Assembly (NCBI RefSeq): GCF_040938485.1 | Contig: NW_027271593.1 | Location: 496,001-560,000 of the forward strand | Length of the DNA: 64,000 bases | Reading direction: 5' to 3' | Source of the DNA: Diadema antillarum | Lineage: Eukaryota | In this document: positions 48,301 to 52,400 of the stretch, piece after piece | Layout: each line of letters opens with the position of its first letter | How positions within the stretch are numbered: position 1 is the stretch's first letter | Program-made: the position numbers and the translations under genes | The notes under the pieces: generated by a model | What the model was told of the DNA's origin: nothing | The model's database searches: none | Seen by the model: only the letters and a program-made list of their open reading frames with translations

Positions 48301-48849
48301 AGGCTTGCACCATATCCCGACAGACGTTCTCGGGCTAGACATTCACTATCGACACTGGCGTCTGCGAATACCATGGCAGCCCTCTCTAGTTTCATTGTCG
48401 GCGCCTTTGTACTCCCTGCTGATGTACTCATCTTTGTACAACTCGGCATCGCACTCGACATTGTCATCGTTTGCAGCTGGTTATACGGTACGTTTTTCTT
48501 CATGTCACTCTGCTATGTTGCCGGACCAGAGGAAACGTTTTGTCTGATTCCATGCTGCCTAAAGAAATCTGACGTCGTAACAACCCAGAAGGAAAAACCA
48601 GTTACACCAGTTGAAAATTTCAACAGGTTCAAGTTGATTTCAACTGGAAGCAGTTATCTGCAAGTGGTTCCAGTCGACTCCAACTGGTCTCTAATGCATT
48701 TCATGTGGACAGTCGGTACGAGTACATGGGATTTAAATAGGCACCAGTCCCCACAACCAGATGATAACTGGTCTGTGCCCATGTTTCCAGTTGCACCAGT
48801 TACACCAGTGAAAACCAGTAACGATTTTAACTGGTCTCTGCTGGTTTAA
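39273..48849 (+). CDS. disp-like: Dispatched-like RND/SSD membrane protein, copy 2, 1080 aa, with a transposon-derived C-terminal tail
   Basis: join(39273-39352,43197-43320,44939-45167,46040-48849) = 3243 nt. Same exon phases and motifs as copy 1, and ~95% aa identity over the shared part of the large exon (manual count, roughly 45 differences in ~840 aa). Confidence 0.9.
40845..40925 (+). repeat. Degenerate TTAGGG-like tract (second example at ~51370-51500)
   Basis: TTAGGGTTATGATTAGGTTCAGGATTAGGATTAGGGTTAGGG; probably the internal microsatellite of a Helentron/HINE-type repeat (inference). Confidence 0.45.
43614..44602. mobile_element. Non-autonomous piggyBac-like element B (989 bp), same family as 25203-26169
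   Basis: TTAA|CCCTATAAAGCCCTAAG...CTTGGGCTTTATAGGG|TTAA. The empty TTAA site is visible in copy 1 at ~28377 and ~28680. Confidence 0.9.
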
Positions 48850-49419
48850 CTGGTCTTCACTGGTTGCAACTGGTACCAGTTAAAATCAGTTGATATGTTG
48901 ATGTCATATCGGTACAAGTTTATACCAGCTGAAATGAAATGGTTACCAGTTGATACCAGCTGATCAAATTTTGTGTACAAGTTGATACCAGCTGATCAAA
49001 TTTTGTGTACAAGTTGATACCAGTTGAGGTCTTCCAGGTACCAGTCAGTTGACTCCAGTTGAAACAATTGAGTCGAATAACTAACCTAAAAAGATACTAT
49101 TCATTGTGGTTCAATCAAGCTGAAATAACTGGATAAATTGCATGGCCAATTTTACACCGGACTGAACATACATATTTAATTCCCATGCATTCATTGACTA
49201 AAAATAATGGCAATTAAACAAAATTAATAAACTGATTAGAGTTGACTGGAAACCAGATGAAAGGTAACTGGTTTTGTATACTGGTCCAGTTGGAAAGTAA
49301 CTGGTTCCGTTTACTGGTTGGAATTCAACTGGACCAGTAAGCCCATTTCAATTTCCAGGGTTACCAGTTGATTGGAACTGGTTCAATTTGTACAGTTGTA
49401 ACTGGTATTTCTTTCTGAG
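48584..49419. mobile_element. Non-autonomous CACTA/EnSpm-like element (836 bp) inserted in the last coding codons of copy 2
   Basis: Termini CCCAGAAGGAAAAACCAGTTACA ... TGTAACTGGTATTTCTTTCTGAG; 2-bp TSD AA (48582-83 / 49420-21); dense ACCAGTT/AACTGGT subterminal repeats. Removing it and one AA restores exact codon register with copy 1. Confidence 0.9.
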
Positions 49420-52400
49420 AAGCCGATATGGACCAGGGGCAGGGGTAGAAAAGGTAAAAATGAGTTCCTTAACTTATGAATATGACAAAGCTGCTGCTGT
49501 GGAATTCCATTTCCCTACGTGTTTGTGTGTGTTTTCTTTTCTTTTCTTTTTATTGCTCTGTGCTGCTAGTCGACAGGATATCGTATTATAAAGAAATCGA
49601 CCTTACGAAACGTCGAGAACACTCACATTGCCATAATGACAGAATTTTTAGCGTCAGCCTTTTATTTGATATCCTTCTCTTGCCGTCTTATGTCTTGGAC
49701 CCTCGTTTAAGTGTAGGCCTACATATTGCAAGCCATTTTAGGTACATTGTATTTCGTAATATCGGGAAGGTGGATCCATTTCCCTGAATAAACATGGTTA
49801 TCTCAACTAATACTATTTGTAAATTTGATAATTAATTAGGATGAAATATGTACTCTTTTCATTACAGAAATCGTTTTGCGAAACTTGCCAAATCTCAAAT
49901 GATAATGCCTACTATGTTATACGTTAGCATTAATCCTTACTGGTGACTCAAACATGCACGGTGCATTTAAAAGTGTCCAAATATTTTTTCATTTGTTATT
50001 TGTTTTTTTACAATAAAGAAACCATATACAGATAAAACACGCATGAAGTTCGTTGATTGGTATGGTTGTCGTGAAATGAATGATATAATGAATACTAGTA
50101 ATTGATAATCTCATTGTTTTCACAGAATTTTAACAATGTTTGATTGAAATCGATTTGAGGTCATTTAGGGGCAATTCTGTGTAGGACAGCTAAGGAAAGT
50201 CCATTGAGATTCAAAGGACGATGTTGTATGAAGGCAATCGACCGCTGGAAGGGCAGCACACTTTGACAAGCGTAACTCAGTACAGCTTCAGCAGTGTGAT
50301 AGATCGATGGAATCCAATAGTACGCACACAGAAAAGCCGGGGTATACAAACACATGTCACACTGAAGTAACTGCATATGAACAGTCAAATGTCTGTAGAA
50401 ATGTCATCTTATTAATGTAAAAATATGAATATAGTTAGTAGTAATATGTAATTTTCTATTTGAGATTACAGCAACGAACAAAACAGTGAAAAAAAACCAA
50501 CCCAGCAAGATACCTTCTTTCACATGTTCCAAAGGGTACGTCTATATCCACCTCGATTTTATTGATTCAATTTACTTCGACAATGAAGTACTGATTTTTA
50601 ACAGAGTACAAGTAACAGATGTAGAGAAATTAGTTTAACCTGCGAATACGTAATAACGGTGTTTTCTTTATCTTTGTCTTATCAACGGAGAAATCTCGGT
50701 CTGCCTAAAAATCTGAGCTATTATTGCGAGAAGTTTAAGAACAGAAAATCCGTTTGAAAGAAATATCTCACCGGATCAGATTGTTTGAATTCGTCAAGCT
50801 TATTGCACACTAGAGGATTACAAGACAAATCCTTAATCTTTAATAATCTTCATCTAAACGTGCTAAGAAATCAGATTGTAGCCAGTGGCGAATAAAACAG
50901 ATTTGACTTGGCAATGATTAAGATACTAACCAGCGAACGGGAAGCCTGGGAGATGTCGTGAATGTGATTTTGTTTTTATTATATACACACAAATACACAC
51001 AAGCACTGAAGCTGTCCATTGCAGATCCTCTTCCGGGTAAATGTTGGTTCACGTCTTAAGTTACACCTGAACCTTACGTAGAAGGATATCTTTTTAGTGT
51101 AGCTATTTAGGATACCCTTTTGAAGCCCTTCGGAATTCTTCGGAACCGTTACACGTTTGGCTATCTTTTCCTCTTTTTTTTTTCTGAATCCACAGCGAAG
51201 TAAATTTGATCCCATTTTTCTTTCGGGAGACTCATTAATAATATGAGCATTAAAAGACAAAAGTCATGTCCTTATATCAAACTGTGTCTATGGCAGTGGC
51301 ACAACATTTGCTCGTGTGGCAATTTTATTATTTCTGTGTTATTTTCTCCAAGGACATAGAGCTATGGTTGGGGTTGTGCCAGGCTAGGGTTTTAGCTTTA
51401 GTTTGATGTGAGGATTAGGATTAGGGTGGGTTTATGTAAAAGGGTAGAATTTAGTCTAAGCATCAGATATTTCATGGGAGCAACTGTCATGTAGGAGTAA
51501 ATGTCAAGGAACAGTGAGTCTTCGTCTGTCATAACAGAGATGTTTTTAATTCTGGGTGTTAATGTTCTGCAATGTATAACCTCTCCGATGTCTTCATGTT
51601 CACAGAAAACTAAGAACGCTTAAAAAGTCAACATATTAGAAATTAAAATCGATATCTGTAAGAGCTGATAGCCTTGGGAGACCGTGCAATTGGAAGCTAG
51701 CCCGGCTTGGAGATACATATTCGAAAATCACCGTAACAAATCGTGTACAGCTTTATACGCAGTTACCTGTATACATACGCAGTCGAAGAATCTCGACTGG
51801 TGTCGAACATACTCGCTGACGGGCAACTCTGTTCTAGCAGACCTGTGCTGGTCGTGGTTTTCAAATGTACATCGTTGGTGAGCGAATAAAGATCGATAGC
51901 ATCTAAGCAATATTATCTCCCAACGCTATCGAGTCTTTGAATCATTTATGAAATTACTTTGATTGAAAATTATTTTCCAAGGGATAATTACTTCAAAAGC
52001 CATAGCATGTTGTGACTACAACTTAGAACCTCGTTGAAGAATACAACGACGGATGTAGGGCCCTACAAAGTATTTGAAATGCGATGTCCTGGACCATTTG
52101 CTGGTACACTGAGTGACAGAGTGAGGAATGTTGGCATCAGACTAGAACTTCATGTGCACGGGACCATTACCCGAGAAATCAGGAAACGATGATTGCCTTG
52201 GTTTCAACAGGTCTCCAGGATACATCACTCCCGACACCCATACCAAGCACACAGATAGGCCTATGTTTTCACGCCATTAAGACCACCGCTTTTAGTAGAT
52301 TGGAAGATCAGGTCAGGGCATCTTATAGACTACCACCTTCATGAGGCAGAATATCAAGCAAATAACTCTATGGGATTATCTTCGCTAGTCTTCAACGCCT

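What the first reader, a model, noticed from the sequence alone, without database searches (positions are those of the whole stretch)
48582..49471. Transposon exonization caught in the act: a CACTA-like element supplies the C-terminus of Dispatched-like copy 2
Seen in the sequence: an 836-bp element with TIRs and an AA TSD inserted ~16 codons before the ancestral stop. The reading frame runs on for ~87 codons inside the element (QKEKPVTPVENFNR...FNWSLLV*, stop at 48847-48849). Excising it gives ACA AGC CGA TAT GGA CCA GGG GCA GGG GTA GAA AAG..., codon-for-codon with copy 1's GCA AAT AGA CAT GAA CCA GAA GCA GAG GTA GAA AAG. The orphaned stop has decayed (TGA at 33393 in copy 1, TTA at 49469 here), so the old tail is no longer under constraint while the upstream ORF is intact. 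An 87-codon open run has ~1.5% probability at uniform base composition (my estimate; the repeat's composition could change this). Inference: cytoplasmic tails of Disp/Patched proteins carry trafficking and turnover signals, so the new tail could change localisation or stability.
Basis: partly seen in the sequence, partly recalled or inferred. Interest (0 to 1): 0.7.

Follow-up and report, generated by a model that had tools for sequence, protein, structure and literature searches.

The report
Old transposon-made tail on Dispatched paralog

Summary
An 836-bp TIR element (48584-49419) with AA/AA flanks sits 16 codons before the old stop of copy 2. The frame runs 87 codons into it, to TAA at 48847. 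Removing it restores codon-for-codon register with copy 1, and the old stop now reads TTA.

"Caught in the act" is wrong. The genome is Diadema antillarum (GCA_040938485.1). Both retained haplotypes carry the insertion, and so does the D. setosum ortholog, at the same site with the same flanks and the same stop. Contigs from three organism labels bridge a junction, and no empty site was seen.

RefSeq models in both species end inside the element. Copy 2 is still under purifying selection in each species (omega about 0.15-0.19). The old tail is dead in both: its stop is lost in one, and a 41-bp deletion removes it in the other.

The new tail evolves much more freely (9 nonsynonymous and 4 synonymous changes, omega about 0.6), which cannot be told from neutral. 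The frame is closed in all related element copies, and shuffles give it 0.5-1.7%.

"CACTA-like" is only half met: the TSD is 2 bp, but the termini are CCCAG, not CAC. No RNA data could be reached.

Verdict: a new, clean example of a known kind of event.

The parts
39273..48849 (+). Dispatched-like copy 2 (RefSeq XP_071504048.1, 1080 aa). CDS pieces lie at about 39273-39353, 43198-43320, 44936-45166 and 46039-48849.
   Evidence: tblastn of P0020 on the window is 98.7-100% identical in four blocks. Pfam finds SSD, Patched and MMPL. E = 3e-182 to solved DISP1 structures.
23867..33395 (+). Dispatched-like copy 1 (XP_071504047.1, 1013 aa). It is the uninterrupted paralog with the ancestral tail ...EVEKVEMSP and stop TGA at 33393-95. 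The empty target AA is at 33344-45.
   Evidence: The D. setosum copy 1 (P0021) ends with the same residues.
48582..48583 (+). Left copy of the 2-bp target site duplication (AA).
   Evidence: The register with copy 1 is exact only if one AA is removed.
48584..49419 (+). 836-bp non-autonomous TIR transposon with many subterminal ACCAGTT/AACTGGT motifs and a 32-bp internal tandem repeat.
   Evidence: It is present at the same site in D. setosum.
48584..48606 (+). 5' terminal inverted repeat, CCCAGAAGGAAAAACCAGTTACA.
   Evidence: The same terminus occurs in about 5 other genomic loci.
49397..49419 (-). 3' terminal inverted repeat. Its reverse complement is CTCAGAAAGAAATACCAGTTACA.
48586..48846 (+). 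87 transposon-encoded codons (QKEKPVTPVENFNR...FNWSLLV). There are 90 codons on the second haplotype and in D. setosum.
48847..48849 (+). Transposon-supplied stop codon TAA, also TAA at the aligned position in D. setosum.
49420..49421 (+). Right copy of the TSD (AA).
49420..49471 (+). Orphaned ancestral tail (16 codons) with the former stop now reading TTA at 49469-71. A 41-bp deletion in D. setosum removes most of it.
49787..49792 (+). AATAAA in a block conserved with copy 1 (33707) and D. setosum. It is the likely ancestral poly(A) signal and probably still in use.
   Evidence: The two signals inside the element (49213, 49226) are not conserved in D. setosum.

Best explanation
The two Dispatched-like genes arose by tandem duplication. 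After that, and before D. antillarum and D. setosum split, a non-autonomous DNA transposon inserted into the last coding exon of copy 2, 16 codons before its stop. The element has a 2-bp TSD, CCCAG termini and subterminal ACCAGTT repeats.

The insertion lies in the terminal exon. In that orientation and phase the element happened to be open for about 87 codons. The gene therefore acquired a tail of 87-90 transposon-encoded residues and a transposon-supplied TAA, in place of a short and poorly conserved 16-residue cytoplasmic tail.

The rest of the element and the old tail became 3'UTR, which probably still ends at the ancestral AATAAA.

The change was tolerated and fixed. The body of the protein stayed under purifying selection. 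The old tail decayed, and the new tail drifts under weak or no constraint.

Shown: the insertion, its age, its fixation in all the samples seen, the annotated CDS, constraint on the gene body, and decay of the old tail.
Inferred: that the tail is transcribed and translated, that the old poly(A) site is used, and that the tail is near neutral.
For: Anatomy and register with copy 1.

That paper says the assembly retains both haplotypes. The second contig, C1146, is 97.7% identical over 3.8 kb with the same flanks. Its tail is open, with an in-frame +9 nt insertion.

D. setosum: XP_072163739.1 carries the tail. Its DNA (L031) shows the same site, the same AA/AA flanks and a TAA at the aligned stop position, plus a 41-bp deletion of the old tail.

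Other samples: contigs bridge junctions in X2 (both junctions), X4 (organism B, 3' junction) and X10 (organism C, 5' junction). No joint matches an empty site.

Constraint on the body: omega is 0.15-0.18 in all pairwise comparisons. The lineage-specific estimates are 0.15 for D. antillarum copy 2 and 0.19 for D. setosum copy 2.

Tail: 9 nonsynonymous and 4 synonymous changes, omega 0.6. This is looser than the body (Fisher p = 0.035) and not different from neutral (p = 0.29).

Ancestral tails are short and unconserved across sea urchins. The poly(A) signal at 49787 is conserved, and those inside the element are not.
Against: - There is no RNA or protein evidence.
- RefSeq models would extend a CDS to the first in-frame stop anyway, so they are not independent proof of translation.
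- Several things might hint at some constraint on the tail. The frame is open and ends at the same aligned TAA in two species and on both haplotypes. The only indel is in frame. No related element copy has this frame open.
- A rough estimate puts the chance of no new stop at about 0.58 and of no frameshifting indel at about 0.10-0.16.
- Nucleotide divergence of the ORF part (5.3%) is somewhat lower than that of the rest of the element (6-8%).
Confidence: 0.72

Rival explanations
1. Co-opted tail. The transposon-encoded C-terminus was kept because it gives copy 2 a new property, for example a sorting or turnover signal in the cytoplasmic tail. That would sub-functionalise the two tandem paralogs.
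For: - The ORF and the stop are preserved in both species and on both haplotypes, and the one indel is in frame.
- The frame is closed in all relatives. By shuffles it is open with probability of only 0.5-1.7%.
- A YxxPhi-like motif is present in both species (SYLQV, SYQQL), read directly.
- Gene conversion between the paralogs never erased the insertion.
Against: - Tail omega is about 0.6, from 13 changes, and cannot be told from 1.
- 9 of the 87 aligned tail residues differ between the species, plus one 3-residue indel. The tail is significantly less constrained than the body.
- The joint neutral probability of an intact frame is only about 0.06-0.09, which is not decisive.
- Local divergence is too uneven to give a neutral yardstick.
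- No Pfam domain is found in the tail.
- Short motifs of this kind arise by chance.
Confidence: 0.15
2. The element is removed from the mRNA. This could happen by cryptic spliceosomal sites or by the TIR-hairpin-triggered 'SOS splicing' described in C. elegans and human cells. The main protein would then not carry the transposon tail.
For: - The transcript would fold with the TIRs paired and is far more structured than shuffles (z = -10.9).
- SOS splicing acts on exonic and 3'UTR DNA transposons with pairing inverted repeats (PMC12779559).
Against: - The sequence that excision would rejoin is decayed in both species. The stop is lost in D. antillarum, and a 41-bp deletion that is not a multiple of three is present in D. 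setosum. No selection has maintained an excised product.
- The gene models of both species end in the element.
- SOS splicing has not been shown in echinoderms.
Confidence: 0.08
3. Copy 2 is an unexpressed or decaying duplicate, and the open frame through the element is a chance relic.
For: No RNA evidence was obtained. The tail looks neutral.
Against: - A 929-codon last-exon ORF is intact in two species and on both haplotypes.
- Lineage-specific omega is 0.15 and 0.19 since the species split.
- Haplotype differences are 0.9% in the exon against 4.3% downstream.
Confidence: 0.05

Closest known systems
TE exonization, that is TE-derived coding sequence in host genes (for example Alu-derived coding exons, PMC6924539, and L1-derived exons, PMC12129022)
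   Same: Transposon sequence is read as part of a host CDS and is fixed in the lineage. As reported for most Alu-derived coding exons, there is little evidence that the new peptide matters.
   Different: - Here the cause is a direct insertion into the terminal coding exon with read-through, not recruitment of an intronic TE by new splice sites.
- It is the only annotated isoform, not an alternative one.
- The element is a DNA transposon in an echinoderm.
Animal CACTA/EnSpm (CMC) non-autonomous elements, for example ENS1_Cis of Ciona with a 2-bp TSD (PMC6004678)
   Same: A 2-bp TSD, short TIRs, and dense subterminal repeats.
   Different: - The termini are CCCAG...CTGRG rather than the invariant 5'-CAC...GTG-3' (PMC6004678, PMC4079192).
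- No autonomous partner or transposase was found, so the superfamily is open.
DISP1 / Dispatched (solved structures 6xe6, 7rph, 7e2g)
   Same: Full-length similarity over residues 19-984 (E = 3e-182) and a sterol-sensing domain.
   Different: - The sea-urchin paralogs are about 1010-1090 aa, belong to an expanded 'dispatched homolog 1-like' family, and lack the long vertebrate tails.
- The transposon tail (residues 994-1080) has no counterpart.
SOS splicing of exonic DNA transposons (PMC12779559)
   Same: An exonic DNA transposon whose inverted repeats can pair in the mRNA.
   Different: Nothing here shows excision, and the rejoined frame has decayed. This is only a testable possibility.

Membership tests
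Dispatched (RND/SSD transporter, DISP1-like) | Sterol-sensing domain | tested here: met
   Pfam PF12349 (E = 6e-12), PF02460 and PF03176 in both copies.
Dispatched (RND/SSD transporter, DISP1-like) | Full-length similarity to Dispatched rather than to Patched or NPC1 | tested here: met
   phmmer against PDB: DISP1 6xe6 at E = 3e-182 over residues 19-984. PTCH1 and NPC1L1 reach only E = 1e-4 to 1e-6, over the SSD alone.
Dispatched (RND/SSD transporter, DISP1-like) | Release of lipidated Hedgehog ligand | not testable with these tools
   This needs a functional assay.
CACTA/EnSpm (CMC superfamily) | Termini 5'-CAC(TA)...GTG-3' | tested here: not met
   The termini are CCCAG/CTCAG in both species and in all related copies. 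The defining termini are as stated in PMC6004678 and PMC4079192.
CACTA/EnSpm (CMC superfamily) | Short TSD of 2-3 bp | tested here: met
   AA/AA here, with exact register to the paralogous empty site. The sister family shows TA, CC and TA in L020, L024 and L068, and one of four pairs does not match.
CACTA/EnSpm (CMC superfamily) | Autonomous partner encoding a CMC-type DDE transposase | tested here: inconclusive
   No second terminus lies within 10-20 kb of three solo ends. No transposase search was done.
TE exonization (TE-derived CDS) | TE sequence lies inside the annotated CDS | tested here: met
   XP_071504048.1 and XP_071511763.1 (D. antillarum) and XP_072163739.1 (D. setosum) all contain the tail.
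TE exonization (TE-derived CDS) | Transcripts and peptides that contain the TE part | not testable with these tools
   No RNA run was returned.
Recent or polymorphic insertion ('caught in the act') | Presence/absence polymorphism, or absence in the sister species | tested here: not met
   The insertion is present on both haplotypes, in X2, X4 and X10, and in D. setosum at the same site. No near-identical copy exists elsewhere in the genome.

The most novel reading that the evidence does not exclude
The transposon tail is a domesticated cytoplasmic module that sets copy 2 apart from copy 1, for example through a YxxPhi-type sorting signal. Alternatively, its TIR hairpin makes the mRNA a natural substrate of SOS-type excision, so that the locus produces two alternative C-termini. 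Either would be a natural example of a DNA transposon remodelling the regulatory tail of a Hedgehog-release protein and persisting for millions of years.
Probability: 0.15. Interest if true: 0.55.

Novelty: new member of a known kind. Interest (0 to 1): 0.3.

Why it matters
This is an unusually clean case of how a coding-exon transposon insertion can be tolerated. An in-genome control exists in the tandem paralog with the empty site, and the same event is present in a second species.

It shows that a 12-TM transporter can swap a short, unconserved tail for about 90 residues of transposon-encoded sequence and stay under purifying selection.

It also gives a natural test locus in an echinoderm for whether hairpin-forming exonic transposons are excised from mRNA.

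On present evidence it does not change what is known about Dispatched or about exonization.

Tried and rejected
- **RNA evidence.** The single run search returned no RNA run. All four laid runs were DNA contigs. X4's pieces begin and end at or near EcoRI and MseI sites, so it is probably a RAD-type DNA library and not RNA.
- **Overall divergence as a test of constraint on the tail.** Rejected, because local divergence between the species ranges from 4% in the last intron to about 20%.
- **Full-length relatives, for classifying the element.** The only other full copy is the allele. The exact-terminus subfamily has about 5 loci, all solo ends.
- **A splice donor at AAG|GTR (33377, 49454) extending the ancestral CDS.** Rejected. 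Copy 1 models of both species end at ...VEMSP.
- **The second full copy (C1146) as a separate paralogous insertion.** Rejected. It has the same flanks at 97.7% identity, and the assembly is known to retain both haplotypes.
- **The bacterial promoter/terminator scan.** Irrelevant for this eukaryote, so ignored.
- **A date for the D. antillarum / D. setosum split.** Not found in the papers searched. From memory only, Lessios et al. 2001 place D. setosum as the earliest-branching Diadema, in the Miocene.
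Full report
**What is in the sequence**

The window holds two tandem copies of a four-exon gene, from a segmental duplication (21490-34496 against 38210-50448). The big last exons are 94.3% identical, and the flanks are 68-85% identical.

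The last-exon ORFs are 30822-33395 (857 codons) and 46060-48849 (929 codons). Both carry a sterol-sensing domain. The full protein matches solved DISP1 structures over residues 19-984 at E = 3e-182, against about 1e-4 to 1e-6 for Patched and NPC1L1. These are genuine Dispatched homologs.

Copy 2 contains an 836-bp element at 48584-49419.
- The TIRs are CCCAGAAGGAAAAACCAGTTACA and, on the opposite strand at the 3' end, CTCAGAAAGAAATACCAGTTACA.
- There are many subterminal ACCAGTT/AACTGGT motifs.
- The flanks are AA/AA.
- Removing the element and one AA puts the next 16 codons in exact register with copy 1's last 16.
- Copy 1's TGA (33393) corresponds to TTA (49469).
- The host frame runs 87 codons into the element, to TAA at 48847.

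**Which genome, and how old is the insertion**

The genome has 1,754,659,819 bases. This is exactly the size of the Diadema antillarum assembly GCA_040938485.1, which its authors describe as inflated because both haplotypes were retained (PMC13511894).

RefSeq XP_071504048.1 (1080 aa) equals the window's copy 2, tail included. XP_071504047.1 equals copy 1.

The only other full-length copy of the element in the genome lies on contig C1146. That contig is 97.7% identical over 3.8 kb with the same flanks, so it is the other allele. Its tail is also open. It has one P-to-Q change and an in-frame 9-nt insertion (+PVT), and it matches XP_071511763.1.

The protein search found D. setosum XP_072163739.1 with the same tail. 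Its DNA (L031) shows the same features:
- the insertion at the identical position;
- AA on both sides;
- a TAA at the aligned stop position.

D. setosum has two further differences. A 239-bp repeat unit lies after the stop, bounded by near-identical ~20-bp direct repeats, so it was probably lost by deletion in D. antillarum. A 41-bp deletion removes most of the old tail.

Laid contigs bridge both junctions in another D. antillarum-label run (X2). They bridge the 3' junction in organism B (X4, 2 mismatches in 147 nt) and the 5' junction in organism C (X10, 15 mismatches in 221 nt). No joint corresponds to an empty site.

So the insertion came after the duplication and before the species split, and it looks fixed. 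"Caught in the act" does not hold.

**Is copy 2 a working gene?**

Nei-Gojobori comparisons of the shared 837 codons among the four genes give dS of 0.17-0.23 and omega of 0.15-0.18. Changes unique to each lineage give the following omega values.

| Gene | Lineage-specific omega |
|---|---|
| D. antillarum copy 1 | 0.10 |
| D. antillarum copy 2 | 0.15 |
| D. setosum copy 1 | 0.17 |
| D. setosum copy 2 | 0.19 |

The transposon-tailed gene has therefore stayed under purifying selection in both species since the split.

Site patterns are a mosaic: 17 support orthology, 28 support concerted evolution and 8 are crossed. The tandem paralogs exchange sequence by gene conversion, but never across the insertion.

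**Is the new tail selected?**

Points that could indicate selection:
- The frame is open in both species and on both haplotypes, with a TAA at the same aligned position.
- The single indel is in frame.
- Shuffles give 0.5-1.7% for such an open run.
- None of the related element copies has this frame open.

Points against:
- Between the species the tail has 9 nonsynonymous and 4 synonymous changes, for omega of 0.6.
- That is significantly looser than the body (Fisher p = 0.035) and not different from neutral (p = 0.29).
- A neutral walk of 14 substitutions leaves the frame stop-free 58% of the time.
- The indel density of the untranslated part of the element predicts no indel in the ORF part 10-16% of the time. 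The joint probability is about 0.06-0.09, which is suggestive but not significant.
- Overall divergence cannot decide the matter, because it ranges from 4% in the last intron to about 20% nearby.

The ancestral tail after the conserved CCxxKS motif is short (7-23 residues) and unconserved among sea urchins. Replacing it was probably cheap. My reading is a tolerated, near-neutral extension. Co-option remains possible at about 15%.

**The transcript**

Everything about the mRNA is therefore inference.
- The stop lies in the terminal exon, so no exon-junction-dependent decay is expected.
- The two poly(A) signals inside the element are not conserved in D. setosum.
- AATAAA at 49787 sits in a block shared with copy 1 and D. 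setosum. The 3'UTR probably runs through the rest of the element and the dead tail to the old site.
- RefSeq models end in the element. NCBI used 12 RNA-seq runs for the D. antillarum annotation. Even so, a gene predictor would stop at the first in-frame stop regardless.
- In silico, the element pairs its TIRs in RNA (z = -10.9). That is the trigger described for 'SOS splicing' of exonic DNA transposons (PMC12779559).
- The independent decay of the old tail in both species argues that no excised, rejoined product has been under selection.

**What kind of transposon**

The exact-terminus subfamily is tiny: 11 hits, which is about 5 loci once allelic contigs are discounted, and all are solo ends.

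A larger sister family has about 100 termini of the form CCCAGGTCGAAAAACCAGTAG and an internal 83-bp minisatellite. It shares internal segments with this element and shows 2-bp TSDs in three of four paired copies (TA, CC, TA).

A 2-bp TSD fits animal CACTA elements (PMC6004678). The CAC...GTG termini that define CACTA and Chapaev are absent, and no autonomous partner was found. "CACTA-like" is therefore unproven, and I leave the superfamily open.

**Verdict**

This is a new, well-controlled instance of a known phenomenon. Interest is modest. Existing RNA-seq would settle the main open point.

Noticed in passing
window 30822-33345 and 46060-48583, with L031:872-3511 and L031:19186-22095: The two tandem Dispatched-like paralogs are about as far from each other within a species as from either gene in the other species (dS 0.17-0.23). 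Site patterns are mosaic: 17 support orthology, 28 support concerted evolution and 8 are crossed. This points to ongoing gene conversion between the copies that stops short of the transposon junction.
   Followed up: partly
window 44851-46040 (last intron of copy 2): This intron is only 4.0% diverged from D. setosum. That is less than the exon's synonymous divergence (0.19) and far less than the other introns of the gene (15-21%). It may hold a conserved regulatory or RNA element.
   Followed up: no
L031 about 22131-22370 (D. setosum), equivalent to window 48877/48878: D. setosum carries an extra 239-bp, diverged second copy of the element's 5' subterminal unit just after the stop. It is bounded by near-identical ~20-bp direct repeats (…GGTTGCAACTGGTAC), so it was probably deleted in D. 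antillarum.
   Followed up: partly
genome-wide, for example L020:1488-3172, L024:1488-3105, L068:1501-2850: A non-autonomous transposon family has about 100 termini of the form CCCAGGTCGAAAAACCAGTAG. Elements are 1.3-3.7 kb, carry an internal 83-bp minisatellite and show 2-bp TSDs. The superfamily is unassigned.
   Followed up: partly
window 1262-1414 and 24406-24570: These are runs of N, although the published assembly is described as gap-free, so they are presumably masked by the operators. I left them alone.
   Followed up: no
window 10182-17368: Several ORFs of 120-190 codons lie on the + strand, upstream of the Dispatched pair. Another first-stage note calls this a GH9 cellulase with CBM2-like modules. 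I did not examine it.
   Followed up: no
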